DNA from: Dendrobates tinctorius
Lineage: Eukaryota
NCBI RefSeq assembly: GCF_039654945.1
Contig: NW_027361787.1
Span: 3,038,001-3,102,000, forward strand
DNA: 64,000 nt
Direction: 5' to 3'
The position numbers were made by a program, and so were the translations under genes. Every line of letters starts with the position of its first letter. Positions within the stretch are counted from its first letter, which is position 1. Of this stretch, positions 1 to 34,300 are shown in pieces. A model generated the notes under the pieces. It saw nothing but the letters and a program-made list of their open reading frames with translations. It searched no databases and was not told the origin of the DNA.

Positions 1-517
1 ACAACACCTTGGAAGGAATCCTTGGAATGCAGAAGCTGAGATACTGGATACCATATATGGAAGTGAAGCTGAAATGGACCTATCATAGACTGACACTGGC
101 TACTCAGGAGATTGTGTGACACCCATTTCCTGTCTCTTTGTCTTGAGAATAAACTTCAGTTGTGTGCAAGCCTTTGCTGAGAAAGGAGTAGACATCTAAC
201 TCTGTGCTCAGTGTGACTCTAAGCGCTCACTTGGCCTATATTGGGTCAGGTGCAAGCAATCATATAGATCTCGCTTTAAGGGATCACCCTCACACTAATC
301 CCAGGAGGTAGGTGGATCCTCCAGGTCGTAAGTTCTATAGAAAAGGGCTTTCACTGCCCAAAGTCATTTGAACAGTTTTGGGTGGAGGAGAATGTTGTGG
401 TCTAGAGGCAAAATGGTGATTATGGTAATACGGCCGGACTACACCACCGATAAAGCAGCCACAGCCGGTGACTGAGAGGAATCTGTGACTTCTCTGCATT
501 CAGTGGTTACTACTCAC

Positions 518-1652
518 CTGGGTGGTCATATGTGGGAATCTCCTCTTTACACCACTCAATACCCCTCACATATGTCTCTGTAGTATTAATATGGGTCAGA
601 TCTTCACCCTGAAACAAATATTGTAAAAGTCACCGACAGATGGAGAAGTCCCATCTATGATCAGCTCTAATCCTACCATCTCCACCGCTCTCATTACACA
701 AGTATAAAACAGATAATACTGGTGGATAAAACAAGACTGAGCACAAGACCTTCACAGCCGTCTACACATCATAGGGGAGAGCTCCTGACACCTTCTCTCC
801 ATCTACCTGATGATCCTGAGGAGCACTGGGATCTTCTTGTTTACAGTCCTGTGGAAGAAGAGGACGGGGATATCTCTCTGGTGTTGTCCTCTTACTGGAT
901 AGATCTGGAGGAAACACATACAGGGACTGAATTCATTCTCTACATACAGATAATTATAGGCCGTGTGTATTTAGTCCTGTCTATTACCTGGAGATGTGAG
1001 GGGCTGGGGAACCTCCATTATGACGTTCTTGTACAGATCTCTGTGTCCTTCTAAATACTCCCACTCCTCCATGGAGAAATAGACAGCGACATCCTGACAC
1101 CTTATAGGAACCTGACACATACAATGATACCGTCATCCCCCGATCCCTTCATAGTGTTACTGTATAATGTCCCAGCATTCCCAGCAGTGTCACCTCTCCA
1201 GTCAGCAGCTCAATCATCTTGTAGATGAGTTCTAGGATCTTCTGGTCATTGATGTCCTCATGGATCAGGGGGTGAGGTGGAGGCCCCGTGATTGGGCTCA
1301 GGGGTCTTCCCCATCCCTCAGACACAGGGTCCTGACAGCGATCACTAGAGGTCTTCTTCACCACTGTGTAATCCTGGTTATGGAGAGACACATTAATAAA
1401 TCTCACTCCAGACATTTCCAGAGTCCTCACCTCTCCAGTTCTGTCCATCTGTTATTCCCATAGATAAGAATGATGTAATGTGACGTCATCAGAATCTCTC
1501 ACCTCTCCAGTGAGACGGAAGAGGATCTCTAGGGTGAGGTGTAACATCCTCTCCGCCATCTTGTCTCTGTCCATATCCATCCTTGATGGGTAAATCAGGA
1601 AAATTCTCTTCTGTAGAAGATCTTCACTGAGAGGATCCGATATTGTAGAGAC
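518..1652 (-). CDS. KRAB-ZNF N-terminal exon cassette A (exons 1652-1503, 1373-1194, 1111-988 KRAB-A, 904-807, 608-518); finger exon lies beyond the window start
   Basis: All exons have AG/GT boundaries, compatible phases and no stops. Translation [26 protein letters not shown] / DYTVVKK...LLTGE / [33 protein letters not shown] (KRAB-A-like) / [10 protein letters not shown]...QDHQ / GEDLTHINT...YDHP. Nearly identical to the + strand gene at 31280-32414. Confidence 0.9.
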
Positions 1653-1984
1653 CTGAATGAAAAGAAGAAGATCCGATGTAACATCATAAGAATCCTGTGT
1701 AATAATACAATGACAGCATGCAATTTGCAGAGTCGGGAGATATGACTCTGCCAAACAGATATATATACATACACACACATATATACAGAATATATCTATA
1801 TATATAATTTCACCATCAAAGAAAGTAAGGACTGCAGCACTCACTGATCCATATTGAAAGTCCGTAGTTTATTTGTAGCAAAAGTTTAAAACTTCATGGC
1901 CGGGAGGCGGAAGAAAGGAGTGAGTAAACTCTAACGACGGCCTAACAGCGCTTCCACGGGTCAGCTATATATAACATATATATA

Positions 1985-3082
1985 TCTATTTATATAATCG
2001 TCTAACTCTGTCTGTCTGTAACGGAAATCCCGCGTCGCTGATTGGTCGTGGCCGGCAGGCCGCGACCAATCAGCGACAGGCGCAGTGCGCAGGCGCAGTC
2101 CGGAATTTGAAGGACACACGCCACCGCTACCGTCGGGAGATCAGCGGCGCTAGGAGTCGGGAGACTCCTCCGGACCTTGGGTACCATAAACCTGTAAAAA
2201 TAGAATTAAAATAAAAAATAGTGATATACTCACCCTCCGACGGCCCCCGGAGCTCTCCCGCCTCTAACCACGCAGCCGGCATCTTCCGTTCCCAGTAATG
2301 ATTTGCGTGAAAGACCGCTGATGACGTCGCAATCTCGCAAGCATCGCGCTCTCGAGAGTGACGTCATCTCCGGTAATTCGCGCTAAGCATAACTGGGAAC
2401 GGAAGATGCCGGGAGCGTGGAGAGGAAAGAAAGAGTCCGGGGACCGTCTGAAGGTGAGAATAACCTTTTTTTAATTTTTTTAGTCTTTTTTACATGCTAT
2501 CTTTTACTATTGATGCTGCATAGGCATCATCAATAGTAAAAATCCACACTTGCGGACAAAAAAGAATATTACTCCTTATCCAAAATGAAGCGAACCACAA
2601 TTATATTAAAAACATGTAACTTTATTAAACAAAACAGAGATAATTGTCTGCTGTTTTTTTCCCCTTTTGGGGTAGGTTATCAGGAAACAATGAATATGTA
2701 GCCAATTTTAAATGTCTTTATTTTGTTTAATAAAGTTACATGTTTGTAATATAATTGTGGTTCGCTTCATTTTGGATAAGAAGGAGTAATATTCTTTTTT
2801 GCCCGCAAGTGTGGATTCATGTGTTGAAGTGCCTATTTAAATACTTGCAAAAAATTGTGGTTTCAATCAATAGTAAAAAGTTGATCACAATTGTCAAAAA
2901 CACTATGCTTCACAAGTGTGACCAACCTGTCAATCACATTCCAAGCGATGCTTCAAATCGTTTGGTATGCGCTTGAATTCCGCGCGTGAATAACGAGTGA
3001 AAAATGTTTTCTGCGGCAAAACGCATACGAATTTGGCCATATTCAAGAATACCCGATGCGTTATAATTGGGCCACCATCTAG
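1985..3082 (+). mobile_element. Non-autonomous Helitron-like element, copy 1
   Basis: 5' TC start (tctatttatataatcgtctaa); 3' hairpin cccgat...attggg followed by CTAG|T at 3079-3083; the same termini recur at 4701-5209. Confidence 0.7.
2543..2865. mobile_element. Short Penelope-type insertion with inverted 5' arm
   Basis: About 90-bp inverted arms (about 2543-2634 and 2721-2816); 14-bp direct repeat atcaatagtaaaaa at 2529-2542 and 2866-2879 (TSD). Confidence 0.65.
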
Positions 3083-3092
3083 TGTACATATA

Positions 3093-4698
3093 CAGTGGGG
3101 AAAAAAAGTATTTAGTCAGTCAGCAATAGTGCAAGTTCCACCACTTAAAAAGATGAGAGGCGTCTGTAATTTACATCATAGGTAGACCTCAACTATGGGA
3201 GACAAACTGAGAAAAAAAAATCCAGAAAATCACATTGTCTGTTTTTTTTTTCATTTTATTTGCATATTATGGTGGAAAATAAGTATTTGGTCAGAAACAA
3301 AATTTCATCTCAATACTTTGTGATATATCCTTTGTTGGCAATGACAGAGGTCAAACGTTTTCTGTAAGTCTTCACAAGGTTGCCACACACTGTTGTTGGT
3401 ATGTTGGCCCATTCCTCCATGCAGATCTCCTCTAGAGCAGTGAGGTTTTTGGCTTTTCGCTTGGCAACACGGACTTTCAACTCCCTCCAAAGGTTTTCTA
3501 TAGGGTTGAGATCTGGAGACTGGCTAGGCCACTCCAGGACCTTGAAATGCTTCTTACGAAGCCACTCCTTCGTTGCCCTGGCGGTGTGCTTTGGATCATT
3601 GTCATGTTGAAAGACCCAGCCATGTTTCATCTTCAATGCCCTTGCTGATGGAAGGAGGTTTGCACTCAAAATCTCACGATACATGGCCCCATTCATTCTT
3701 TCATGTACCCAGATCAGTCGTCCTGGCCCCTTTGCAGAGAAACAGCCCCAAAGCATGATGTTTCCACCACCATGCTTTACAGTAGGTATGGTGCTTGATG
3801 GATGCAACTCAGTATTCTTTTTCCTCCAAACACGACAAGTTGTGTTTCTACCAAACAGTTCCAGTTTGGTTTCATCAGACCATAGGACATTCTCCCAAAA
3901 CTCCTCTGGATCATCCAAATGCTCTCTAGCAAACTTCAGACGGACCCAGACATGTACAGGCTTAAGCAGTGGGACACATCTGGCACTGCAGGATCTGAGT
4001 CCATGGTGGCGTAGTGTGTTACTTATGGTAGGCCTTGTTACATTGGTCCCAGCTCTCTGCAGTTCATTCACTAGGTCCCCCCGCGTGGTTCTGGGATTTT
4101 TGCTCACCGTTCTTGTGATCATTCTGACCCCACGGGGTGGGATTTTGCGTGGAGCACCAGATCGAGGGAGATTATCAGTGGTCTTGTATGTCTTCCATTT
4201 TCTAGTTATTGCTCCCACAGTTGATTTCTTCACTCCAAGCTGGTTGGCTATTGCAGATTCAGTCTTCCCAGCCTGGTGCAGGGCTACAATTTTGTTTCTG
4301 GTGTCCTTTGACAGCTCTTTGGTCTTCACCATAGTGGAGTTTGGAGTCAGACTCTTTGAGGGTATGCACAGGTGTCTTTTTATACTGATAACAAGTTTAA
4401 ACAGGTGCCACTACTACAGGTAATGAGTGGAGGAAAGAGGAGACTCTTAAAGAAGAAGTTACAGGTCTGTGAGAGCCAGAAATCTTGATTGCTTGTTTCT
4501 GACCAAATACTTATTTTCCACCATAATATGCAAATAAAATGAAAATAAACAGACAATGTGATTTTCTGGATTTTTTTTTCTCAGTTTGTCTCCCATAGTT
4601 GAGGTCTACCTATGATGTAAATTACAGACGCCTCTCATCTTTTTAGGTGGTGGAACTTGCACTATTGCTGACTGACTAAATACTTTTTTTCCCCACTG
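3093..4698 (-). mobile_element. Full-length Tc1 DNA transposon (long IR/DR-type TIRs)
   Basis: TA-flanked TIRs of about 205 bp beginning cagtggggaaaaaaagtatttagtcag; contains a complete transposase ORF. Confidence 0.95.
3310..4332 (-). CDS. Tc1 transposase, 340 aa, DD34E
   Basis: Paired-like N-terminus, [20 protein letters not shown] and [11 protein letters not shown]; 34 residues between the second D and the E. Confidence 0.95.
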
Positions 4699-4700
4699 TA

Positions 4701-5209
4701 TATAATCGTCTAATTCTGTAACGGAAATCCCGCGTCGCTGATTGGTCGCGCCCGGGGACAACACTGAAGGTGGAGGAAAATGGCGCCCGCAGCAGTCCTC
4801 CACAGGAACTTCACCAACGATGTGCCCTGCCTTAACTTGAGCAGAGGAGGGCGAAAAAACCCCGGTCAGCAAGGGGCAAGCCTAAGGCAGGACGCAGATG
4901 CTGTTCAGAAGGAAATCTCCACACCGCCCGAACACCGGGTAGCGGTGATGTCACCACAAAGGAGGAAGATGGCGCGTGCAGCAGGCAGAGAGGGAACCTT
5001 TACCAGCGGTGTGCCCAGGGAAAACAAGGTCAGATGAGGGTCCAGCTCCCCAGGTCTGCAAGGGGCAATCCCAAAGTCGATTCCAGAAGCCTTTCCAAAG
5101 CAATTTTCTACACCGCCCGAACATTCATTGCATTATTCTTAAATCTTCATAAATAAACTACATACATATTCTAGAATACCCGATGCGTTAGAATCGGGCC
5201 ACCATCTAG
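4701..5209 (+). mobile_element. Helitron-like copy 2 (its 5' tip is split by the Tc1)
   Basis: Same 5' sequence (tataatcgtctaa...gtaacggaaatcccgcgtcgctgattggtcg) and 3' cccgatgcgttagaatcgggccaccatctag|t as copy 1, but a different interior. Confidence 0.7.
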
Positions 5210-6014
5210 TGTCATTTAGACTCTGTTCATATGTTCAGGTTTTAAATACATTAGATAGGGACTGCTTCAATAAGGGTTACCTTGACGAGGTGGAGCAGCT
5301 TGGGATACATTTTTTTGCAAAAAAAGTATTGACTAAATACCCTGTATTTGTTGTCATCTTTTTATCAGCACTTGCTGACTACTGTTATATGTCTTACTGC
5401 AAGGTATTTCTGCACATTTGTCATTCTGTGCTTTCTGTTTGTGTTTCACCATCTAGTATAGGATAATTATATATACACACACATTATAGCAGAGTCATAT
5501 CTCTCGACTCCGCAGATGGCATGCTGTTGTTGTAGGCCCAGACCAGATGGTATGGAGATGAATGAGGGAGACCAAAGTTAAAAAATAGACTTTCCTTCAC
5601 TTAATAAGAACTTGATGAGAAGTATATACATCAGATGGCAGGCACAACACTTTTGCTGATTTAATAGCAGAATATAGCCGAACATGCACAGCACAAAAGC
5701 CGGAGTTTCCCAAGCTGTATGGCAGTGTGGTAAACACTGGTGTAGTGCTTCTGATTGGCGGTAAAATCATCCCCGCCGGTCACAGAGCCGTGGTTCCCAC
5801 ACTGTCAGAACACAGCATGACCACCCAGCTGTGATTGGAGGTAAAAAGTTTATCTCCGGTCACTGGTGTCAGCTCTAATACTGCCATCTCCACCGCTCTC
5901 ATTACACAAGTATAAAACATATAATACTGGTGGATAAAACAAGACTGAGCACAAGACCTTCACAGCCATCTACACATCATAGGGGAGATCTCCTGACACC
6001 TTCTCTCCATCTAC

Positions 6015-9000
6015 CTGATGATCCTGAGGAGCACTGGGATCTTCTTGTTTACAGTCCTGTGGAAGAAGAGGACGGGGACATCTCTCTGGTGTTGTCCTCT
6101 TACTGGATAGATCTGGAGGAAACACACACAGGGACTGAATTCATTCTCTACATACAGATAATTATAGGCCGTGTGTATTTAGTCCTGTCTATTACCTGGT
6201 GATGTGAGGGGCTGGGGAACCTCCATTATGACGTTCTTGTACAGATCTCTGTGTCCTTCTAAATACTCCCACTCCTCCATGGAGAAATAGACAGCGACAT
6301 CCTGACACCTTATAGGAACCTGACACATACAATGATACCGTCATCCCCTGATCCCTTCATAGTGTTACTGTATGATGTCGGTCTGTCATTCCAAGGATGT
6401 CATTCTAAGGATATCATCTGAAATATGCCTGAAAATGACTCCCTGCTATAGATGCTTCATTATTATTATTGCTATGCTTCACTATTACTATCACTCTGAC
6501 AATCGATCTGCTTCATCCACAGGTATGTGTTCTGGCTGCAATACCATCATCACCCATCTTTCCTGACCCCCAATCACCCCTGTATCTGTCTGCTATCAAT
6601 GGTATGTATCCCGGCTGCAATACCATCATCACCCAGCTTTCCTGAACCCCAATCACCCCTGTATCTGTCTGCTATCACTGGTATATATTATGGCTGCAAT
6701 ACTATCTCCCTTTGCATTTCCTCTTGTGACTTTAATTAATCATCCTGTGTCTGCATCCAGTCTCCCTGCTGCTCCTCCCTTTCTGATCACACCTGGGCCC
6801 TTTCATGTGCTGTTAAGTTAGTATAAATTCAGACTAAGAGATCTGTCTGACCACGGTCCGTCATTGCAAGGATGTCTTCTAAGGATAACATCTGAAATGA
6901 GCCTGAAGTGACCAGAAGGTACGACTAACCGCTGCATTTACATGTACTAAATTTCTTTTGCCTTCTAAATTACTCTCACCATGCTGACATACGCTCTAAC
7001 AGTTTTGGCTCCACTACTCCTCCCTCGCCTTCGCTATCCGCAAACCCCAGTGCCCGCTAACCAAATAATAATCTCTCCTTCCCTTTTGCCTCCCCACCTG
7101 ACCTCCACTGCTGACCTGCTCCTCCACCTCAGAGCTCTCCTAATAAAATACAAAACAAGCCACCCACCCTCCTTCTCCCACACGCTCTCCCTCTCTCTGC
7201 TTCTCCTCACTGCTGGCGACATATCTCTCAACCCTGGACCCACACAGCCCATACCTCCCATTGTTGCCCCCTTCTATCATTCCCAAACCAACACAAACAC
7301 CAGAAATCTTTCCCACCTCAAATCCATGCCCTTGACACCCACCACCCTGCTCCCACTCTTTGGCTCACTCTGGCGTGCCAGCTCCGTCTGCAATAAACTC
7401 CATGTGATTCATGACCTCTTTACCTCTCGTAATTTTTCCTTCCTTGGCCTCATCGAAACATGGCTGACACCCTCCGACACTGCCTCCCCTGCTGTGCTAG
7501 GTTACGGCGGCCTCCACTTCACCTACACTCCTCGCCCTGGCAACAGACATGGCGGAGGAGTGGGCCTTCTCCTTTCTTCCAATTGCACCTTCAACCCAAT
7601 CCAACCTCTACCCTCCCTTATCCTCCCCTCTTTTGAAGTCCACTCTGTCCGCATCTACTCTCCCTCCAACCTCCAAGTGGCCGTCCTATACCGACCTCCA
7701 GGTCCGACCACTGCCTTCATTGACCAATTCTCCACCTGGTTCCTTCACTTTCTCTCTGCTGACATTCCCACCATGATCATGGGTGATTTGACGAATCAAT
7801 AGACAACCCTGGCACAATAACACCACTAAAAAGCTTCGGTAAGCATTCAGAATTGCAGAACGGCGCTGGAAGAAAACGCATTCGCAAGACGACTTCACTG
7901 CACTCAAACAAGCAACACTTGCATTCAAATCTGCCCTCACCTCTGCTAAACAGGCCTACTTTACATCCCTTGTATCTTCCTTATCCCACAACCCCAAACA
8001 GTTGTTCAGTACTTTTAACTCTCTCCTCCACCCACCACTTCCCCCTCCAACCTCTCTCATCTCTGCCGAGGACTTTGCGCACACTTCAAAAACAAGATGG
8101 CCCAAACACGGCATGTCTTTATTGCTCAACCACCACAACCCCTTTACACACCAGACCAAAGCCCAAACCCCATAACCTCCCTATGTAACATCACTGAAGG
8201 GGAGCTTGCTCATCTCTCCAAATTACACCTCACCACTTGTGCACTTGATCCTATGCCATCCCACCTCCTCCACAACCTCGCCACCACTCTTATTCCATCC
8301 CTAAACCACCTCTTCAACCTATCATTTACTTCTGGTACCTTCCCTTCTGCTTTCAAACATGCCACAATCACGCCTATCCTTAAAAAGCCAACCCTCGACC
8401 TAACAGCCACGTCCAGCTATCGCCCAATATCGCTGCTCCCATTCGCTTCTAAACTCCTGGAGCAGCACACCCACGCTGAACTTTCCTTCCACCTCTCATC
8501 TAACTTGCTCTTTGACAATCTACAATCTGGTTTCCGCCCCCATCATTCCACTGAGACAGCCCTGACCAAAATTACCAATGACCTGCTTACAGCCAAATCT
8601 ACGGGACAACACTCTATACTCCTCCTAACACAATTGACCTCTGCCTCCTATTAAACATCCTCTCTCCTCCTTCGGCATCAAAGATCTCGCCCTATCCTGG
8701 ATTTCCTCATACCTTTCCAACCGCACATTCAGCGTCTCCCACTCCCACACTACCTCCTCATCCCACCCTCTCTCTGTTGGAGTCCCCCAAGGCTCTGTTC
8801 TAGGACCCCTACTCTTCTCAATCTATACACTTGGCCAGGGGCAACTCATAAAGTCCCACGGATTCCAGTACCACCTTTATGCCGATGATACTCAGATCTA
8901 CCTCTCTGGCCCAGACGTCACTTCTCTGCTCTCCAGTATCCCAGAGTGTCTATCAGCCATATCCTCCTTCTTCACCTCTCGCTTACTCAAACTCAATGTA

Positions 9001-10452
9001 GACAAATCTGAACTCATCATCTTTCCCCCATCTCACAGATCTTCCTTACCCGACCTTTCTATAACAATTGACATCATGCTTTCCCCCCTACCGAAGGTCC
9101 GCTGCCTGGGAGTAACCCTTGACTCTGCCGTGTCCTTTAAACCGCACATTCAAGCTCTCTCCACCTCCTGCCGCCTCCAGCTCAACAATATTTCCAGAAT
9201 CCGTCCCTTCCTCAACCCTCATTCTACTAAAATGCTTGTACATGCCCTCATCTTCTCCCACCTCGACTATTGCAACATCCTTTTCTGTGGCCTCCCTGCT
9301 AACATCCTTGCACCTCTCCAGTCCATCCTCAACTCTGCCGCCTGATTAATTCATCTCTCTCCTTGCTACTCCTCCGCTTCTCCCCTCTGCAAATCTCTTC
9401 ACTGGCTCCCATTCCCTCAGTGTATCCAATTTAAATTACTAATACTGACCTACAAGGCCATCTATAACCTGTCTCCCCCATGTGTCTCTGAACTAATCTC
9501 CCCATACCTTCCCTCATGTAATTTCTGGTCCTCCCAAGACCTCCTTCTCTCCTCCACACTTATTCGCTCCTCACCCAACCGCCTCCAAGACTTCTCCCGA
9601 AGTGCCCCTATTCTCTGGAATTCTTTGCCCCAACACGTCCGGCTATCAACCACACTCGGATCCTTCAGACGGAACCTGAAAACCCACCTCTTCAAAAAAG
9701 CCTACAGCCTGCAATGACTCCATTACCTCCTCACCACTACCGGAGATATCACCTCAACCAACACCGGAACTGCTGCAACCCCCCCAACCTACTGTCTCCT
9801 TCCCCACCATCCTGTAGCATGTAAGCCCGAAAGGGCAGGGTCCTTTCTACCCTCTGTATCAGTCTGTCATTGTTAGTTTGTTTACTGTCAATGATATCTG
9901 TAACTCTATGTAACCCCTTCTCATGTACAGCACCATGGAACCAATGGTGCTTTATAAATAAATAGTAATAATGTCCCAGCAGTCCCAGCAGTGTCACCTC
10001 TCCAGTTAGCAGCTCAATCATCTTGTAGATGAGTTCTAGGATCTTCTGGTCATTGATGTCCTCATGGATCAGGGGGTGAGGTGGAGGCCCCGTGATTGGG
10101 CTCAGGGGTCTTCCCCATCCCTCAGACACAGGGTCCTGACAGCGATCACTAGAGGTCTTCTTCACCACTGTGTAATCCTGGTTATGGAGAGACACATTAA
10201 TAAATCTAACTACAGACATTTCCAGAGTCCTCACCTCTCCAGTTCTGTCCGTTATTCCCATAGATAAGAATGATGTAATGTGACATCATCAGAATCTCTC
10301 ACCTCTCCAGTGAGACGGAAGAGGATCTCTAGGGCGAGGTGTAACATCCTCTCCGCCATCTTGTCTCTGTCTATATCCATCCTTGATGGGTAAATCAGGA
10401 AAATTCTCTTCTGTGGAAGATCTTCACTGAGAGGATCCGATACTGTAGAGAC
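6015..10452 (-). CDS. KRAB-ZNF N-terminal exon cassette B (exons 10452-10303, 10177-9998, 6319-6196 KRAB-A, 6112-6015); no fifth exon
   Basis: Open exons with canonical splice sites, near-identical to cassette A; ATG at 10380. Similarity to A stops at about 5868, before exon 5. An L2 is inserted in intron 2. Confidence 0.85.
6380..9967 (+). mobile_element. L2-clade LINE, internally deleted and frameshifted
   Basis: APE endonuclease ([25 protein letters not shown]; 6981-7790) and RT ([34 protein letters not shown]); 3' tail tttataaataaatagtaat; imperfect TSD atgatgtc/ataatgtc at the point where the paralogous intron is uninterrupted. Confidence 0.9.
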
Positions 10453-11491
10453 CTGAATGAGAAGAAGATGATCCGATGTAACATCATAAGAATCCTGTGT
10501 AATAATACAATTACTGGAGATAATAAGGGAAACATATGAGGAGATTTATTATCTTACAGGGTTTAGTTTTCTTCCCTGACATCTACTAATAAAACCTATA
10601 TATTTAGGCCACAGACAACAAGCAGTTTCCTCCTCGGAGTCGGCAGCTGAACACGTTCTTCATAGACTCATCTTCCATAACGCTAATTCTCGTCTCATTA
10701 CCGACACTGGAATCGGCATTAACAATACTGCAGGAGATATTCATTACACGCGACATGAGAAATAACTCCTTCATGATGAGGACGACATCTTCATCATCTA
10801 CTGCGGCTCTAGAGACAGATGTGGCCAGAGTCGGTCACTGCCTCCATCCCCACCGGCCGTCTATATGAAGGTTTCCCGTCTTCCCCGCACTGTAATCTTC
10901 TATCACGTTAGATCTCAGCTCTGAGTCACACACAGAAGTTTGAGGCTTTTAGAAAGATTTTTTGTTTCCACAAACACAACGGACAGAAATGATCTGATCC
11001 CAAAGTCTCCATGTACAGTGATTTATGGGGATTATTTCTGGCCTTAGGCTTTCCTATATTACAAGAAAAACTCCAGAAAAAGCCGATATTAAAATGTTTC
11101 TAAAGAAAATTGGCTCCAACAATTCTTGTAAGAAGAAAAAAATAAGAAAAAAGCAGAAGACACATTTTATAATTTTTAACATGTTGAACATTTATTAAAA
11201 AGAAATGAATCTTTTTGATCCCCAGAACATAGATATACACAGCAGGGACGGCACAGATGAGGCTGCAACAAAATCCCTGACAGTTTAACCACTTGCTGCT
11301 GTGAAAAGCAAACATGATATCTAAGAAGGTGTGACAGAGTTTGGCTGAATGCCCCCCGCCCCCAAGTACTCGATAGTATGGGGCGGCTTAGTTACTGCGA
11401 TACTTACATGCCTAATAATGGTGTCTGGGCTGCAATATATGAAGGTCTATTAGGCCGGGCCAGAGGCAGCATCCAATAAGTTACCTTATAA

Positions 11492-11768
11492 CGCCCCATA
11501 CACATTAAAGTTCCATTAAAGCACTGATTTCGGGGGGGGTTTGGCCGACCATATAATGTATTTGGGGGCCTCCCGACAGATGATGTCAGGGCAGAGAAGG
11601 ATCTGACATCCTGAATTTCAGAGGATAATCCGTTAGAGGAGTCTGGAGGCGACTCTCTCATACAGACCACAGGAAAGCTGGAATATTTGTGTGTATGGGG
11701 GAGTCGGGAGAGATCGCCGTCTGCCAAATGACCGTTCAGCCAACTCTGATCTCATGTGTATGGGGCCG
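11492..11768. mobile_element. MITE, probably PIF/Harbinger type
   Basis: TIR gccccatacacat / atgtgtatggggc with TAA/TTA-like flanks. Confidence 0.6.
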
Positions 11769-12111
11769 TTAGTATTACACTGACAGGCAGTGATGATACA
11801 CGGCACTACAGTAGTACAGGGCATCACCGGAGCCATCAGATGCTTGTATGTTGTATGATCGCACTGATCAGAGGGGTTTAAAAAAGGTTTAAAGTGGAAA
11901 AAAATTACAGTTTCAGCAACAATAAATATCCATCACTATATGGAAAGCAGAGTCACTGCACAATGTTAGTTACGTCACGTCCATAACTACTTTATTATAC
12001 TCTATTATCCTGTACACGGTGGAGTAGATAGAAATCACAGATCCCACAGCAATAGCTGGAATTGGCCCCTCCAACGCAAAGAAAAAAGAACAATCTATCT
12101 CTACCTATGTA

Positions 12112-13045
12112 CACTGTTCAAAAAAATAAAGGAAACGCTTAAAAAACAGAATATAACTCCAAGCAGATCAAACTTCTGTGAAATCAAACTGTCCACTTAC
12201 GAAGCAACACTGATTGACAATCAATTTCAAATGCTGTTGTGCAAATGGAATAGACGACAGATGGAAATTATGGGCAATTATCAAGACACCCTCAATAAAG
12301 GAGTGGTTCTGCAGGTGGGGACCACAGACCACATCTCAGTACCAATGCTTTCTGGCTGATGTTTTGGTCACTTTTGAATGTTGGTTGTGATTTCATACTC
12401 ATGGTAACATGAGACGGACTCTACAACCCACACAAGTGGCTCAGGTAGTGCAGCTCATCCAGGATGGCACATCAATGCGAGCTGTGGCAAGAAGGTTTAC
12501 TGTGTCTGTCAGCGTAGTGTCCAGAGGCTGGAGGCGCTACCAGGAGACAGGCCAGTACACCAGGAGATGTGGAGGGAGCCGTATGAAGGCATCAACCCAG
12601 CAGCAGGACCGCTACCTCCACCTTTGTGCAAGGAGGAACAGGAGGAGCACTGCCAGAGCCCTGTAAAATGATCTTCAGCAGGCCACAAATGTGCATGTGT
12701 CTGCACAAACAGTTAGAAACTGACTCCATGAGGATGGTCTGAGAGCCCGACGTCCACAGATGCGGGTTGTGCTCGCAGCCCAACACCGTACAGGACGCTT
12801 GGCATTTGGCACAGAACACCAAGATTGGGAAATTCACCAATGGCGCCCTGTGCTCTTCACAGATAAAAGCAGGTTCACACTGAGCACATGTGACAGACGT
12901 GACAGAGTCTGGAGACGCCGTGGAGAGCGATCTGCTGCCTGCAACATCCTTCAGCATGACCGGTTTGGCAGTGGTCAGTAATGGTGCGGGGTGGCATTTC
13001 TTTGGAGGCCACACGATGTTGGGCTGTGAGCACAACCCCCATGGA
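12112..13045 (+). mobile_element. 3'-truncated Tc1-like transposon (pseudo-transposase)
   Basis: TA then cactgttcaaaaaaataaagg terminus; [33 protein letters not shown] and WRPVLFTDKSRF; in-frame stops; no right TIR. Confidence 0.85.
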
Positions 13046-13113
13046 GACACAATTGTGCCTTTACCTGGAGATAAATTCCCAGTGGGGGCAATTTCCAAAA
13101 TGCAATAACTTAA

Positions 13114-13386
13114 GGCTATGTGCACACGTAGTTTTTTGGGTGTGCAGATTTTGTAGAGAAAAGCGCAGGTAAATCCGCAGGACAAAAGTCCTTCGGTTTT
13201 ACACCTCATAATGGATGAGGTGTAAAACTGCAGCGTTTCTGCACCAAACAATTGACATGCTGCGGATTGTAAACCGCAGCAAAACCGCGCGGAAAAATCC
13301 GCAGCATGTGCACAGCATTTTTTAATTTCCATAGGAAATAAAGGTACTGTAGAACGCAGCAGAATCCGCACCATGTGCACATACCC
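13114..13386. mobile_element. PIF/Harbinger-type MITE
   Basis: TIR ggctatgtgcacac / atgtgcacataccc with TAA on both sides. Confidence 0.75.
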
Positions 13387-13684
13387 TAAGTGAGGAATTC
13401 AGCTCTTTTCACACTTAAGGGATCTGTATATGGAGTCTACAAACTACAGTGGGGGAAATAAGGATTTGTTACGCTGCCGATTTTGGGGCTAAAGTCACAT
13501 TTTTGTGAGGAAAAAAAGTAAAATTGTCATTTTTTCCTTCCACATTGCTGAAATTCCCGTCACACTATCCGAATTCAGATATTGTCCTGTCAGAAAGGAG
13601 AATACAGAGAGTGAAAGGGTTAATAGGACTCACAGGAGGAACCGGCCCAGAAAGCAGAAGGTCCAGGAGTGTCCGCCACATATA

Positions 13685-13785
13685 TGACTGCTCTGTGCAC
13701 ACAGGACCTGTGATGAGGTCACAGGAGGGGAGGAGTCAGGGGTCACATGATCAGGGGCCTCAGTGTGTGCAGGACTCAGTGTGCT
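13685..13785 (-). promoter_or_regulatory. Recurrent ZNF 5' motif block (putative promoter), copy 1
   Basis: Reverse complement of gatcatgtgacccctgactcctcccctcctgtgacctcatcacaggtcctg; also at 15675-15737 (-) and 30820-30920 (+), each time upstream of and co-oriented with KRAB exons. Confidence 0.5.
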
Positions 13786-14179
13786 GGAGCGCTCCCGATA
13801 ATCAGCTGCGTGTGTCGCTCTGTGTGATAGTCACAGCACCTGCATGGAGGGCGACACATGCAGCTGATTATCGGGAGCGCTCCAGGGATCCGGGGTCCCG
13901 ATGCAGCTATTCGGTAAGTGATATTAGCCAATAACAACTTCTCCGACGATATTCGCTCATCTCTAGTAATAACAGCTCAAAGAAATTCACCGAACTTTTC
14001 ATTAAGTTTAATAGTAAGACCCTATTAAATATTGAGCACCAGCGGGATGAAGCATTGACAGCGGCATGTAAAAGTGTGGGCGCCCCGGGTCAAAATGGAG
14101 ATTTGTGTACTGAGATAATTTTGACCAAGATTTCACACCTTAATTAGCTTGTTAGGGTTATGGTGAGATCACATGGTGA

Positions 14180-15598
14180 CCAGGAGCTACAGTCTGAGGA
14201 AAGGGCTAAAAAGCCTTCACTAGACCCCTGTACAGCTGTATAATGAGGCCCAGGCTTTATAGTGAAGGGACAGGAGTGAGGGCCTGTGCCCAGGAGCTAC
14301 AGTCTGAGGAAAGGGCTAAAAAGCCTTCACTAGACCCCTGTACAGCTGTATAATGAGGCCCAGGCTTTATAGTGAAGGGACAGGAGTGAGGGACTGTTCC
14401 CAGGAGCTACAGTCTGAGGAAAGGGCTAAAAAGCCTTCACTAGACCCCTGTACAGCTGTATAATGAGGCCCAGGCTTTATAGTGAAGGGACAGGAGTGAA
14501 GGCCTGTTCCCAGGAGCTACAGTCTGAGGAAAGGGCTAAAAAGCCTTCACTAGACCCCTGTACAGCTGTATAATGAGGCTCAGGCTTTATAGTGAAGTGA
14601 CAGGAGTGAGGGCCTGTGCCAAGGAGCTACAGACTGAGGAAAGGGCTAAAAAGCCTTCACTAGACCCCTGTACAGCTGTATAATGAGGCCCAGGCTTTAT
14701 AGTGAAGTGACAGGAGTGAGGGCCTGTGCCCAGGAGCTACAGTCTGAGGAAAGGGCTAAAAAGCCTTCACTAGACCCCTGTACAGCTGTATAATGAGGCC
14801 CAGGCTTTATAGTGAAGGGACAGGAGTGAGGGCCTGTGCCCAGGAGCTACAGACTGAGGAAAGAGCTAAAAAGCCTTCACTAGACCCCTGTACAGCTGTA
14901 TAATGAGACCCAGGCTTTATAGTGAAGGGACAGGAGTGAGGGTCTTCTGCCCAGGAGCTACAGTCTGAGGAAAGGGCTAAAAAGCCTTCACTAGACCCCT
15001 GTACAGCTGTATAATGAGGCCCAGGCTTTATAGTGAAGGGACAGGAGTGAGGGCCTGTTCCCAGGAGCTACAGACTGAGGAAAGAGCTAAAAAGCCTTCA
15101 CTAGACCCCTGTACAGCTGTATAATGAGGCCCAGGCTTTATAGTGAAGGGACAGGAGTGAGGGCCTGTTCCCAGGAGCTACAGTCTGAGGAAAGGGCTAA
15201 AAAGCCTTCACTAGACCCCTGTACAGCTGTATAATGAGGCCCAGGCTTTATAGTGAAGGGACAGGAGTGAGGGCCTGTTCCCAGGAGCTACAGTCTGAGG
15301 AAAGGGCTAAAAAGCCTTCACTAGACCCCTGTACAGCTGTATAATGAGGCCCAGGCTTTATAGTGAAGGGACAGGAGTGAGGGCCTGTTCCCAGGAGCTA
15401 CAGACTGAGGAAAGAGCTAAAAAGCCTTCACTAGACCCCTGTACAGCTGTATAATGAGGCCCAGGCTTTATAGTGAAGGGACAGGAGTGAGGGCCTGTGC
15501 CCAGGAGCTACAGTCTGAGGAAAGGGCAAAAAAGCCTTCACTAGACCCCTGTACAGCTGTATAATGAGGCTCAGGCTTTGTAGTGAAGGGACAGGAGG
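14180..15598. repeat. 110-bp tandem satellite, about 13 copies
   Basis: Unit ccaggagctacagtctgaggaaagggctaaaaagccttcactagacc...gggcctgtgc starting at 14180, 14290, 14400 ... 15501, with few substitutions. Confidence 0.97.
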
Positions 15599-15646
15599 GA
15601 GAAAAGTGGGGAAAGGAGCCAGAAGAGCCGGACTGCCCATCACTAA

Positions 15647-30920: not shown

Positions 30921-31351
30921 TGTAGAAATCTCCGGCCTCGGGGGTCTCACCAGACTTCGCTCTTTTCTTGCAGGGGCCGCAGTGGATTTCATCCTGGATC
31001 CATAGAGCTGAATAGAGGAGCGATGTTCCTTCACTCTGATGGTAATTGATGGTGACGTTGATGAGTCTATGAGGAACGTGTTCAGCTGCCGACTCCGAGG
31101 AGGAAACTGCTTGTTGTCTGTGGCCTAAATATATAGGTTTTATTAGTAGATGTCAGGGAAGAAAACTAAACCCTGTAAGATAATAAATCTCCTCCTATGT
31201 TTCCCTTATTATCTCCAGTAATTGTATTATTACACAGGATTCTTATGATGTTACATCGGCTCATCTTCTTCTCATTCAGGTCTCTACAATATCGGATCCT
31301 CTCAGGGAAGATCTTCTACAGAAGAGAATTTTCCTGATTTACCCATCAAGG

Positions 31352-34300
31352 ATGGATATGGACAGAGACAAGATGGCGGAGAGGATGTTACACCTCACCC
31401 TAGAGATCCTCTTCCGTCTCACTGGAGAGGTGAGAGATTCTGATGACGTCACATTACATCATTCTTATCTATGGGAATAACAGATGGACAGAACTGGAGA
31501 GGTGAGGACTCTGGAAATGTCTGTAGTGAGATTTATTAATGTGTCTCTCCATAACCAGGATTACACAGTGGTGAAGAAGACCTCTAGTGATCGCTGTCAG
31601 GACCCTGTGTCTGAGGGATGGGGAAGACCCCTGAGCCCAATCACGGGGCCTCCACCTCACCCCCTGATCCATGAGGACATCAATGACCAGAAGATCCTAG
31701 AACTCATCTACAAGATGACTGAGCTGCTGACTGGAGAGGTGACACTGCTGGGAATGCTGGGACATTATACAGTAACACTATGAAGGGATCGGGGGATGAC
31801 GGTATCATTGTATGTGTCAGGTTCCTATATGGTGTCAGGATGTCGCTGTCTATTTCTCCATGGAGGAGTGGGAGTATTTAGAAGGACACAGAGATCTGTA
31901 CAAGAACGTCATAATGGAGGTTCCCCAGCCCCTCACATCTCCAGGTAATAGATAGGACTAAATACACACGGCCTATAATTATCTGTATGTAGAGAATGAA
32001 TTCAGTCCCTGTATGTGTTTCCTCCAGATCTATCCAGTAAGAGGACAACACCAGAGAGATGTCCCCGTCCTCTTCTTCCACAGGACTGTAACCAAGAAGA
32101 TCCCAGTGCTCCTCAGGATCATCAGGTAGATGGAGAGAAGGTGTCAGGAGATCTCCCCTATGATGTGTAGACGGCTGTGAAGGTCTTGTGCTCAGTCTTG
32201 TTTTATCCACCAGTATTATATGTTTTATACTTGTGTAATGAGAACGGTGGAGATGGCAGGATTAGAGCTGATCATAGATGGGACTTCTCCATCTGTCTGT
32301 GACTTTTACAATATTTGTTTCAGGGTGAAGATCTGACCCATATTAATACTACAGAGACATATGTGAGAGATGATGAGCGGTGTAAAGAGGAGATTCCCAC
32401 ATATGACTACCCAGGTTAGTAGTAACCACTGAATGCAGAGAAGTCACAGATTCCTCTCAGTCACCGGCTGTGGCTGCTTTATCGGTGGTGTAGTCCGGCC
32501 GTATTACCATGATCACCATTTTCCCTCTAGACCACAACATTCTCCTCCACCCAAAACTGTTCTAATGACTTTGGGCAGTGAAAGCCCTTTTCTATAGAAC
32601 TTACAACCAATTACATTGTTTCTGATCCTAAGGAATTCAGATTACTGCACAATCTCTCCTGAAATGGGGAGCAATAAGGAATTCAGATTACTGCACAATC
32701 TCTCCTGAAATGGGGAGCAATATTATTTTCTCTAATCTTCTGCTCAGGATCCATAGTAGCTCCTATGGTCCACCATAAATGAGGGCAACTCTGGTTTACT
32801 GTTTAATCTGTATTTGTAGTTTTCAGTTAATGAGATTCTCGTGCTCTGGGGCGGGGCTGTGGGCGGGGCTGTGGATGGGACTGTGGGCGGGGCTTTATGT
32901 GGTGCACTGATTACATATTCCTCTGTATTGGCTTATGACCGGTCGCTGATCCCTCACTGACCTGCCCCCCATTATTACATAATGCATATAATAGCATTGA
33001 TATTATTGGTGATAATGCCTATAATATTGTGGCCATTGTGAGGCTTAGAAAAAAATTTCATCCAGCAAAATTTCAACTTATCCAGATGTGTATTGATCAC
33101 CTTGAACCCTCAAGTGCTTCACAGAAGTTAATTATGTAGAGCCGTGAAAATAAAAAATCATATTTTTTTCACAAAAAATGATCGCTTCTCTCTCACCCAT
33201 GACAGCACCATGGAGAGAGGGGATCCGCCCATCAGGGACAGAAACCTACAGATAAAAAGGGCGGTACCTCTCCTCCGCCCCTGGTTGGGTTCCTGTCCCT
33301 GACGGGTGACCTACAGAACCGCAGCAGCTTAACTAATAGGAGATCCAGGGCTGTCCCGTCCGGGGGCTCACAGCGGGGAAGCCCCTGTCATGGCGGGTCG
33401 GTTCCTGAAGCCGCCACCGCTGCAGCCGACGGGCTCGACAGGGTGAGCGGGGGGGAGAGGACTGAGCCGCCGCTCTGGAAAGGATTCTGGGGCTGGTGGG
33501 GACCCGGGACACACACGGGCAGCGCCATGGTACAGAGGTGTACCAATATGGTGCTGCCCCGGAAATGGATAAATGTCTTCTGAGTCAGCGCACTGCGCAC
33601 TCCCCGGGGCAGACAGCGGTGCAGTCTGGTAGAGGAGGTGACGTCACGCGCCGCGAAATTCGAAAATGAAAGTGCTGGAATTGCTCCTGGCTGGAGGCGT
33701 CCTGTAAGTATGGAAGACAGCGACCAGCAAAGGGAGCAACAGCTCAAGCAGCAGCCTAAGCAGCAGCCCAGGCAACAGCAACACCAGCATCACCGGCAAA
33801 AAGAGCAGGACAGGAGTGATGGCCGATCCAGTCGCCACTCCACGCAACGCAGCAGGTCGGCTGCAAGGAGCAAGTCACCATCCTTGGATCAGCCCGTACG
33901 GGACCTGAATCCACCTCCCGAACCGGTACCTGCAGCCGCGCATATCTGGTGAGTGACCTTCGAGAATGTTCACCATTGTAATAGACTTCTTTTCCCTTAT
34001 CAGGGAAAAAAGAAGGGGAAACAAAGAACAGGGAATGCCCCACTTATAGCAGAGCCCTGCGAATCCTGCATACAGGAAGTTCTTTGTGAGGAAACCCCGG
34101 ATTTCGCCTCGGACCTAAGAGCTGTAATCAGATCAGAGGTTCAGAGTGCCCTTTTATCCCTGAAACAAGGGGAAAAAGTTAAAAGGAAGGACTCTGGAGT
34201 GGGTTCCCAGTCAGAAGTCTCGACGTCAGGGGAGGTTACCTCACATACCTCAGTCACCGGCTCATCATCCTCAGACGAGGAAACGGGAGGCCATCATTGT

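What the first reader, a model, noticed from the sequence alone, without database searches (positions are those of the whole stretch)
518..10452. Tandem KRAB cassettes that splice in frame: candidate double-KRAB zinc-finger gene
Seen: cassette B (exons 1-4) lacks exon 5 and a finger exon. Cassette A (exons 1-5) lacks its own upstream region, because similarity to its paralogs ends at about 1711. B exon 4 ends in phase 0 (...QDHQ). A exon 1 starts in phase 0, and its 72-nt pre-ATG segment is stop-free ([24 protein letters not shown]). Inference: one transcript B1-B4-A1-A5-fingers could encode two repressor modules, with a former 5'UTR recruited as the linker.
Basis: partly seen in the sequence, partly recalled or inferred. 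Interest (0 to 1): 0.7.

Follow-up and report, generated by a model that had tools for sequence, protein, structure and literature searches.

The report
Two-module KRAB zinc-finger gene, poison frog
Two tandem copies of the front (KRAB) part of a poison-frog zinc-finger gene can be spliced in frame into one double-KRAB protein; sister genes are already annotated this way in public frog genomes, so this is an ordinary family member whose own transcript is still unproven.

Summary
On the minus strand, cassette B (exons 1-4, 10452-6015) lies 4.4 kb upstream of cassette A (exons 1-5, 1652-518). All splice sites and frames are intact, and exon 3 of each cassette is a KRAB box. B has no exon 5 or finger exon. 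A's similarity to B and to a third copy C stops at 1714.

The double-KRAB reading is plausible but not new. RefSeq/GenBank models from five dendrobatoid frogs carry exactly this join (...PQDHQ|[31 protein letters not shown]...). Among the 120 best cluster representatives, 80 have two or more KRAB boxes.

The closest sister gene is in Dendrobates tinctorius (locus L002, 915-aa model). It shares B's upstream 5.6 kb, the same first coding exon (window 10774-10748) and the same donor and acceptor letters. The window's 407-codon model is stop-free and 94% identical to that protein.

The "former 5'UTR" is already coding in many relatives, which start MW[SC]AALQVE in an upstream exon.

RNA reads did not settle this locus. 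They come mostly from paralogs, and no B4-A1 joint was among the 15 of 155 joints displayed. A's finger exon lies outside the window.

The scan found the same layout earlier on other DNA of this genome (s1-377038).

The parts
10748..10774 (-). B0: candidate first coding exon (MKELFLMSR) with donor gtaatg at 10747-10742, 295 nt upstream of B1
   Evidence: 33 of 33 letters are identical to the CDS start of the D. tinctorius RefSeq two-module model P0301 in L002 (8001-8033). It is in frame with B1. Assigned by homology only; no RNA seen here.
10303..10452 (-). B1: 72-nt leader plus MDIDRDK... exon, phase 0 to 0
   Evidence: acceptor ...ctcattcag, donor gtgaga
9998..10177 (-). B2 (DYTVVKK...ELLTGE), 180 nt
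6380..9967 (+). 3.6-kb LINE fragment (endonuclease and reverse-transcriptase ORFs), antisense, inserted in B intron 2. It is absent from A and C.
   Evidence: Self-BLAST breakpoints; Pfam Exo_endo_phos 7e-4 and RVT_1 3e-7
6196..6319 (-). B3: KRAB-A box exon
   Evidence: Pfam PF01352, 6.3e-10
6015..6112 (-). B4, ends in phase 0 (...QDHQ), donor CATCAG|gtagatgg
   Evidence: the donor letters are the same as the donor used in the RefSeq model at L002
5869..6014 (-). Remnant of intron 4 after B4 (146 nt). If unspliced it reads [14 protein letters not shown] and then a stop.
   Evidence: Homology to A and C ends at 5869. The same tail is found in 174-aa RefSeq models such as P0124.
5535..5868 (.). 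Stretch X: 334 nt unique to this locus, between the B remnant and the transposon block
   Evidence: No match in the window or in L001-L003. Zero RNA reads in X21 and X24.
1715..5534 (.). Composite transposon block bounded by 46-nt inverted repeats (5489-5534 and 1706-1751). It contains an intact Tc1/Sleeping-Beauty-like element (3088-4703).
   Evidence: repeats; HTH_SB, DDE_3; boundaries
1503..1652 (-). A1: 72-nt leader (candidate linker) plus MDMDRDK... exon, acceptor ...ttttcattcag
1194..1373 (-). A2
   Evidence: A1-A2 joint seen in RNA reads of the family
988..1111 (-). A3: KRAB-A box exon
   Evidence: Pfam PF01352, 6.3e-10; A2-A3 joint seen in RNA reads
807..904 (-). A4, ends in phase 0
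518..608 (-). A5, ends in phase 1. The expected finger exon lies beyond the window start.
   Evidence: Family reads leaving exon 5 continue into letters identical to the finger exon of gene C.
10775..15601 (-). Upstream region of B, colinear at 93-97% with the 5' flank of the annotated sister gene. It includes a tandem array of 13 units of 110 nt at 14176-15601.
31280..32414 (+). Comparator gene C: single cassette, exons 1-5, 98% identical to A and B. Its finger exon is at 52894-54014.

Best explanation
B and A are the two front modules of one KRAB zinc-finger gene of a type common in dendrobatoid frogs. A roughly 1-kb piece of an ancestral gene was duplicated in tandem. The piece ran from 60 nt before the leader exon to 146 nt after exon 4. 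The junction between the copies now holds 4.2 kb of foreign and transposon DNA.

Only the upstream copy B keeps the gene's 5' region, including the candidate first coding exon B0 (10774-10748). A has lost its own 5' region. A transcript started upstream of B would therefore be spliced B0-B1-B2-B3-B4, then across a 4,362-nt intron to A1's acceptor, then A2-A5 and on to a finger exon beyond the window.

The predicted protein starts with 9 residues from B0. It then has two copies of [24-aa leader, two LTGE-motif exons, KRAB-A box, exon 4], followed by exon 5 and a C2H2 array. The second leader serves as the linker.

Shown here: the sequence anatomy, the intact 407-codon frame, and the same join in annotated sister genes. 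Inferred: that this locus is transcribed and spliced this way, and that each KRAB box recruits a TRIM28-type corepressor.
For: - All 10 exons are intact, with canonical splice sites and a 407-codon stop-free frame.
- KRAB is detected in both modules.
- A phmmer search with A1 plus leader finds the whole 50 residues at internal positions of RefSeq/GenBank proteins, directly after ...PQDHQ.
- A word search with a two-module query gave 80 of 120 top cluster representatives with two or more KRAB boxes. Of the 120, 53 have at least one exon4-to-leader join, and 65 have no fingers between the KRAB boxes.
- D. tinctorius models carry the join letter for letter.
- Sister locus L002 (P0301, 915 aa) has the identical first coding exon, 5.6 kb of colinear upstream DNA, module 1 without exon 5, and the same donor and acceptor letters. 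The window's model is 383/407 identical to it.
- A lacks the more than 1 kb of upstream DNA that B and both modules of L002 and L003 keep.
- Family RNA reads are on the gene's strand and show that the leader acceptor is a real, used acceptor.
Against: - No B4-A1 joint (1652 to 6015) is among the 15 joints displayed out of 155. Loose ends at the exon-4 donor lead mostly to exon 5, and loose ends at the leader acceptor lead to 5' exons that are not in the window.
- There are zero reads in the locus-specific stretch 5426-5819. Reads on A and B introns carry letters of other copies (places 1408, 675, 6127). Expression of this locus is therefore unshown.
- The B0-type start is rare among the fetched models (2, against 34 with MW.AALQVE). 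That common first exon is absent from the window.
- RefSeq models are predictions, and some are clearly chimeric (transposon tails; one three-module model spans 192 kb).
- B shows no sign of purifying selection (4 nonsynonymous and 2 synonymous private changes; exons are no better conserved than introns).
- The finger exon of A was not seen.
Confidence: 0.55

Rival explanations
1. B is a stand-alone, finger-less remnant. Its transcript runs through the exon-4 donor and ends in the intron-4 remnant or stretch X. That gives a KRAB-only protein of about 174-183 aa ending ...[19 protein letters not shown] would then be either silent or driven from some promoter inside the transposon block.
For: RefSeq holds many such 159-177-aa finger-less models named 'gastrula zinc finger protein XlCGF66.1-like', some with this same read-through tail (P0124; clusters of 10-65 members). 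An ATTAAA lies at 5665, about 350 nt after B4. Family reads show low-level coverage just past exon 4 (bin 5820-6016).
Against: B4's donor is intact and identical to a donor that RefSeq uses for the module-to-module join. There are no reads at all in 5426-5819, where such a transcript would have to run or end. No first exon or promoter for A was found in 1715-5868, and RNA depth there is confined to transposon parts.
Confidence: 0.25
2. The pair is a recent, transcriptionally dead by-product of cluster turnover. B (and perhaps A) are neutral duplicates that merely have not yet acquired stops.
For: Divergence is only 2-3%, too little for decay to show. B's private changes look neutral (4 nonsynonymous, 2 synonymous; similar rates in exons and introns). 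There are no locus-specific RNA reads. The usual first exon is absent from the window.
Against: All eight modules compared (window, L001-L003) keep 552 nt of open frame at up to 10% divergence, and the modules of R. imitator L001 are 6% apart yet intact. B keeps the upstream region of an annotated gene.
Confidence: 0.15
3. The duplication is an assembly artefact (a falsely doubled cassette).
For: The family is highly repetitive: depth on the exons in run X16 is tens of times that of unique stretches.
Against: A and B differ at 16 of 911 aligned positions. B carries a 3.6-kb LINE that A lacks, and the flanks differ on both sides. An exact 123-nt contig of the independent run X15 covers 5771-5893 across the B/X boundary, though with only 25 letters on the B side. 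X16 has depth in all 30 bins. The same layout exists at other loci and in other species.
Confidence: 0.03

Closest known systems
RefSeq two-module KRAB zinc-finger models of Dendrobates tinctorius (for example XP models P0301 915 aa, P0294/P0297/P0298, P0296, P0371), with equivalents in Phyllobates terribilis, Ranitomeya imitator, R. variabilis and Anomaloglossus baeobatrachus
   Same: Same exon set, same phases and the same exon4|leader join (...PQDHQ|[31 protein letters not shown]...). The 407-aa front part is 94-95% identical. At L002 the first coding exon, the upstream DNA and the splice-site letters are also the same.
   Different: None of the proteins fetched is identical to the window's model (best 98% per module). 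The duplication boundaries and the DNA between the modules differ: 4.4 kb here, 13.5 kb in L002, about 29 kb in L003, and 5.7 kb in R. imitator L001, whose repeated unit runs from -310 to +170. These look like separate events or heavily remodelled copies.
Human double-KRAB zinc-finger proteins ZNF333 and ZFP28
   Same: Two KRAB boxes ahead of one C2H2 array. [quoted passage not shown] 2002, cited in PMC8479281). ZFP28 has two KRAB domains, one a repressor and one an activator in a recruitment assay (bioRxiv 10.1101/2020.09.09.288324).
   Different: No orthology is implied. The frog module also carries two LTGE-motif exons ahead of the KRAB box, and the two frog modules here are near-identical recent duplicates.
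Xenopus KRAB/FAX-type zinc-finger proteins (XlCGF66.1, XlCOF29, XFIN)
   Same: NCBI names the single-module relatives 'XlCGF66.1-like' and 'XlCOF29-like'. An amphibian KRAB-AB domain (XFIN) represses transcription and binds TRIM28 (PMC3912051).
   Different: Only a KRAB-A box is detectable here. The N-terminal exons 1-2 have no Pfam family. That they correspond to the FAX box is my recollection of the older Xenopus literature and was not tested.

Membership tests
KRAB-C2H2 zinc-finger genes | KRAB-A box | tested here: met
   PF01352, E 6.3e-10, 39 bits (cut-off 20.4), for exon 3 of both A and B
KRAB-C2H2 zinc-finger genes | C2H2 finger array in the same gene | not testable with these tools
   The exon after A5 lies beyond window position 1. 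The sister copy C has a 10-finger exon at 52894-54014, and family reads join exon 5 to such an exon.
KRAB-C2H2 zinc-finger genes | KRAB-B box | tested here: inconclusive
   Exon 4 gives no Pfam hit at E up to 1. The Pfam model is mostly A box.
Dendrobatoid two-module KRAB-ZNF genes (as annotated in RefSeq) | Two same-strand cassettes of exons 1-4 with intact frames and splice sites, and no exon 5 or fingers between them | tested here: met
Dendrobatoid two-module KRAB-ZNF genes (as annotated in RefSeq) | Exon 4 (phase 0) can join the leader exon in frame using the family's donor and acceptor | tested here: met
   Donor CATCAG|gtagatg and acceptor ...cattcag|GTCTCTACAATATCGG are the same as those used in the P0301 model at L002
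Dendrobatoid two-module KRAB-ZNF genes (as annotated in RefSeq) | 5' region and first coding exon shared with an annotated member | tested here: met
   Window 10774-10742 is identical to L002 8001-8033. Window 9968-15601 is colinear with L002 at 93-97%.
Dendrobatoid two-module KRAB-ZNF genes (as annotated in RefSeq) | Transcript that contains the module-to-module join at this locus | tested here: inconclusive
   In one search the joint 1652-6015 is not among the 15 of 155 joints shown. Most reads are 95-99% alike, so they come from paralogs or another species. No reads fall in the locus-specific stretch.
Human double-KRAB ZNFs (ZNF333, ZFP28) | Orthology or shared descent of the duplication | not tested
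   This is a resemblance of architecture only. The frog duplications are young (2-6% divergence).

The most novel reading that the evidence does not exclude
Multi-KRAB N-termini could be a lineage-specific, recurrently generated and actually expressed architecture of dendrobatoid frogs. The roughly 1-kb 'leader to exon 4' cassette appears to have been duplicated many times independently, with different breakpoints in the window, L001 and L002. That would give proteins with two, three or more KRAB modules, and would tune corepressor recruitment in a way that is rare in mammals. This locus would be a very young example, caught with a transposon block at the duplication joint.
Probability: 0.35. 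Interest if true: 0.45.

Novelty: new member of a known kind. Interest (0 to 1): 0.22.

Why it matters
On its own this locus adds little: the layout is already in public annotation of sister genes, and double-KRAB proteins are known from human. The broader pattern may be worth a specialist's look. Dozens of frog models have two or three KRAB modules, apparently made by separate duplications, and I found no paper in the searched library describing this. If long-read cDNA confirms the models, poison frogs would offer a natural series for asking what extra KRAB modules do to repression strength.

Tried and rejected
- RNA test of the join. The only read-laying run covered 501-6400 with two raw poly(A) RNA runs and two contig sets. 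Reads were mostly 95-99% alike, and only 15 of 155 joints were printed, ranked largely by contig depth. Neither presence nor absence of the B4-A1 joint can be claimed. Even the certain exon4-exon5 joint is not in the printed rows.
- The 5' exons seen as loose ends at the leader acceptor were searched in the window, and none was found. A search for the common first coding exon (..AAL[QR]VE) in all six frames also found nothing.
- A word search with a junction-spanning piece (P0004:150-250) was meant to find short RNA-derived fragments carrying the join. All hits were NCBI genome models, so there is no independent transcript evidence.
- I tried to learn whether this very locus is annotated. No fetched protein is identical to A, B or C, and none was flagged as window-encoded.
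- Selection test on eight modules: exons are not better conserved than introns and pN/pS is 0.3-1.4, so it does not discriminate between the readings.
- Rfam scan of 1-12000: no hit.
- A simple transposon-insertion explanation for A's boundary is rejected. There is no target-site duplication, and the DNA beyond the other inverted-repeat arm is not A's missing upstream.
- Assembly artefact is rejected as unlikely (see rivals).
- The joined spliced model was never sent to a search tool. Exons were searched one by one by reference, and joining was done only in local scripts for frame and identity checks.
Full report
**What is there**

Read on the minus strand, window 10452-518 holds two copies of the front cassette of an anuran KRAB zinc-finger gene.
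- Cassette A: A1 1652-1503 (ATG at 1580), A2 1373-1194, A3 1111-988, A4 904-807, A5 608-518.
- Cassette B: B1 10452-10303, B2 10177-9998, B3 6319-6196, B4 6112-6015.

Every exon has an AG acceptor and a GT donor. Exon 4 ends in phase 0 (...QDHQ). The exon holding the ATG begins in phase 0 with 72 stop-free nucleotides ([24 protein letters not shown]). Exon 3 of both cassettes is a KRAB box (PF01352, E 6.3e-10). The other front exons have no Pfam family. No exon-5-like or finger-like sequence lies between B4 and A1. The one exception is the finger exon assumed after A5, which lies outside the window.

**The duplication**

Self-comparison shows three copies, A, B and C. C lies on the plus strand, with exons at 31280-32414 and a 10-finger exon at 52894-54014. 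The three copies are about 2% apart from one another.
- A equals C from 1714 to 324.
- B equals A over 10514-9968 and 6379-5869. The break between those two blocks is a 3.6-kb antisense LINE in B intron 2 (Pfam endonuclease and RT).
- B and C share 158 nt more upstream than A does.

The repeated unit therefore runs from 60 nt before the leader exon to 146 nt after exon 4. Between B's end (5869) and A's start (1714) lie two things. One is a 334-nt stretch that matches nothing else. The other is a composite transposon block bounded by 46-nt inverted repeats (5489-5534 and 1706-1751), which contains an intact Tc1/Sleeping-Beauty-like element (3088-4703). One inverted-repeat arm abuts A's boundary exactly, but there is no target-site duplication. 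How the joint arose remains open.

An assembly artefact is unlikely:
- A and B differ at 16 of 911 aligned positions.
- B alone has the LINE.
- An exact contig from an independent run covers 5771-5893, though only 25 of its letters lie on the B side of the boundary.

**Relatives**

I searched with A1 plus its leader (50 aa, by reference) against 1.84 billion representative proteins. This gave 113 hits. In many of them the whole 50 residues sit inside the protein, directly after ...PQDHQ, which is the end of exon 4. The hits are RefSeq or GenBank models of Dendrobates tinctorius, Phyllobates terribilis, Ranitomeya imitator, R. variabilis and Anomaloglossus baeobatrachus. The closest ones (96-100% over the 50 aa) are almost all D. 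tinctorius.

A word search with the first 400 residues of a two-module model (P0009) returned 3,556 proteins at E up to 1e-30. Among the 120 best cluster representatives:
- 80 have two or more KRAB boxes (15 have three);
- 53 have at least one exon4-to-leader join;
- 65 have no fingers between the KRAB boxes and at least three fingers after them.

D. tinctorius models carry the join with the same letters as the window predicts...[22 protein letters not shown]|[39 protein letters not shown].... The two-module layout is thus an annotated, common architecture of this family. An earlier follow-up of this scan reached the same conclusion for another locus of this genome (s1-377038).

**The nearest sister gene**

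Locus L002 (D. tinctorius JAYMGB010000478.1) holds the gene of P0301, a 915-aa 'isoform X1'. Its order is:
- a first coding exon;
- module 1 (exons 1-4), cut 7 nt after exon 4;
- 13.5 kb of other DNA;
- module 2 (exons 1-5);
- a finger exon 10 kb further on.

Its first coding exon, ATGAAGGAGTTATTTCTCATGTCGCGT|gtaatg, is identical to window 10774-10742 on the minus strand. I call this exon B0. Window 9968-15601 is colinear with L002's 5' flank at 93-97%, including a tandem array of 110-nt units. The exon-4 donor and leader acceptor that the RefSeq model uses have the same letters as B4's donor and A1's acceptor.

Joined only in a local script, B0-B1-B4-A1-A5 gives 407 stop-free codons. These are 383/407 identical to the first 407 residues of P0301 and 386/407 identical to P0297.

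A lacks the more than 1 kb of upstream DNA that B, and both modules of L002 and L003, keep.

Duplication boundaries differ between loci. In R. imitator L001 the unit runs from about -310 to +170, and its two modules are 94% alike. The layout has therefore arisen, or been remodelled, more than once.

**The linker**

The 72-nt segment is not simply a former 5'UTR. At least 34 of the fetched models start in an upstream exon with MW[SC]AAL[QR]VE and read straight into it. The best-supported RNA loose end at the leader acceptor (70 reads, run X21) translates to ...MCSAALRVE| in frame. In other transcripts the upstream exon has a stop, and the segment is then untranslated. That common first exon is absent from the whole window. 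B has the rarer MKELFLMSR exon instead.

**RNA**

Twenty contig sets held part of the cassette, but none is on record as RNA (14 were only guessed to be). The listed runs on record as RNA were four raw-read poly(A) runs added by species label. I laid two of those runs (X21, X24) and two contig sets (X15, X16) on 501-6400.

What the reads show:
- Coverage lies on the exons and on the gene's strand.
- Joints exon1-2, 2-3 and 3-4 have hundreds of reads.
- Short loose ends at the exon-4 donor (138 reads in X24) read into exon 5.
- Loose ends after exon 5 (119 reads) match the first 30 nt of C's finger exon exactly.
- Loose ends at the leader acceptor lead to several 5' exons that are not in the window.

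What limits them:
- Most reads are only 95-99% alike.
- Reads on A and B introns carry the letters of other copies (places 1408, 675, 6127).
- The locus-specific stretch 5426-5819 has no reads.

These reads therefore describe the family, not this locus. A 1652-6015 joint is not among the 15 of 155 joints printed. The certain exon4-exon5 joint is not printed either, so absence from that table proves nothing. One contig joins exon 2 to exon 5 (607-1193). This is a KRAB-less isoform that RefSeq also has (P0025).

**Selection**

Among eight modules (window A, B, C; L001-L003), exons are not better conserved than the short introns, and pN/pS is 0.3-1.4. B's private changes are 4 nonsynonymous and 2 synonymous. 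All eight modules keep 552 nt of open frame at up to 10% divergence, but most were chosen from annotated models. The test does not separate the readings.

**Verdict**

My best reading, at about 0.55, is that B and A are the two front modules of one gene, as at the annotated sister locus. The rivals are:
- B as a stand-alone finger-less unit ending in intron 4, like the many 174-aa RefSeq models (P0124): 0.25.
- A dead recent duplicate: 0.15.
- An assembly artefact: 0.03.

Double-KRAB zinc-finger proteins are also known in human: ZNF333 (Tian et al. 2002, cited in PMC8479281) and ZFP28 (bioRxiv 10.1101/2020.09.09.288324). An amphibian KRAB domain represses transcription and binds TRIM28 (PMC3912051). 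The finding is therefore a new member of a known kind, and interest is low to modest. The wider abundance of multi-KRAB models in these frogs is the part that might repay long-read cDNA work.

Exons were searched one by one by reference. The joined model was not sent to any search tool.

Noticed in passing
window 3088-4703 (-): Tc1/Sleeping-Beauty-like transposon with an intact 340-aa transposase ORF (4332-3310) and 213-nt terminal inverted repeats that are 98% alike. A 98.6% identical copy sits in D. tinctorius locus L003 (59886-61505). This looks like a recently active family.
   Followed up: partly
window 14176-15601: Tandem array of 13 units of 110 nt (96% matches) upstream of cassette B. 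A longer array of the same unit lies upstream of the sister gene in L002 (1-4982).
   Followed up: partly
window 607-1193 (joint in run X15): An RNA-like contig joins exon 2 directly to exon 5, skipping the KRAB exon and exon 4. A RefSeq model (P0025) has the same KRAB-less form.
   Followed up: partly
window 5123-5210 and 3038-3085; L001 32152-32239: A short element of about 88 nt has RNA reads with loose ends on both sides in two runs. It occurs twice in the block between the cassettes and has a 96.6% copy in R. imitator. There is no Rfam match and its nature is unknown.
   Followed up: no
window 31280-32414 and 52894-54014 (+): Gene C is a complete single-module gene whose 10-finger exon lies 20.5 kb after exon 5, across an intron filled with retroelements. 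119 RNA reads leave exon 5 into letters identical to 52894-52923. C lacks B's first exon, because B-C similarity stops at 10672/31060.
   Followed up: partly
whole window: The family's usual first coding exon (MW[SC]AAL[QR]VE), seen in at least 34 fetched models and in RNA, is absent from all 64 kb in any frame, even though three cassettes are present.
   Followed up: partly
window 1706-1751 and 5489-5534: A 46-nt inverted repeat bounds the transposon block. One arm abuts A's homology boundary exactly, there is no target-site duplication, and the 334 nt beyond the other arm (5535-5868) match nothing. This may be a trace of how the duplication formed.
   Followed up: partly
modules in window, L001, L002, L003: Across eight modules the coding exons diverge as fast as or faster than the short introns between them (for example 0.083 against 0.051), with pN/pS mostly 0.6-0.8.
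   Followed up: partly
protein P0266 (D. tinctorius): A three-module RefSeq model has a gene range of 192 kb that contains other called genes. Some multi-module models may be stitched across separate cassettes.
   Followed up: no
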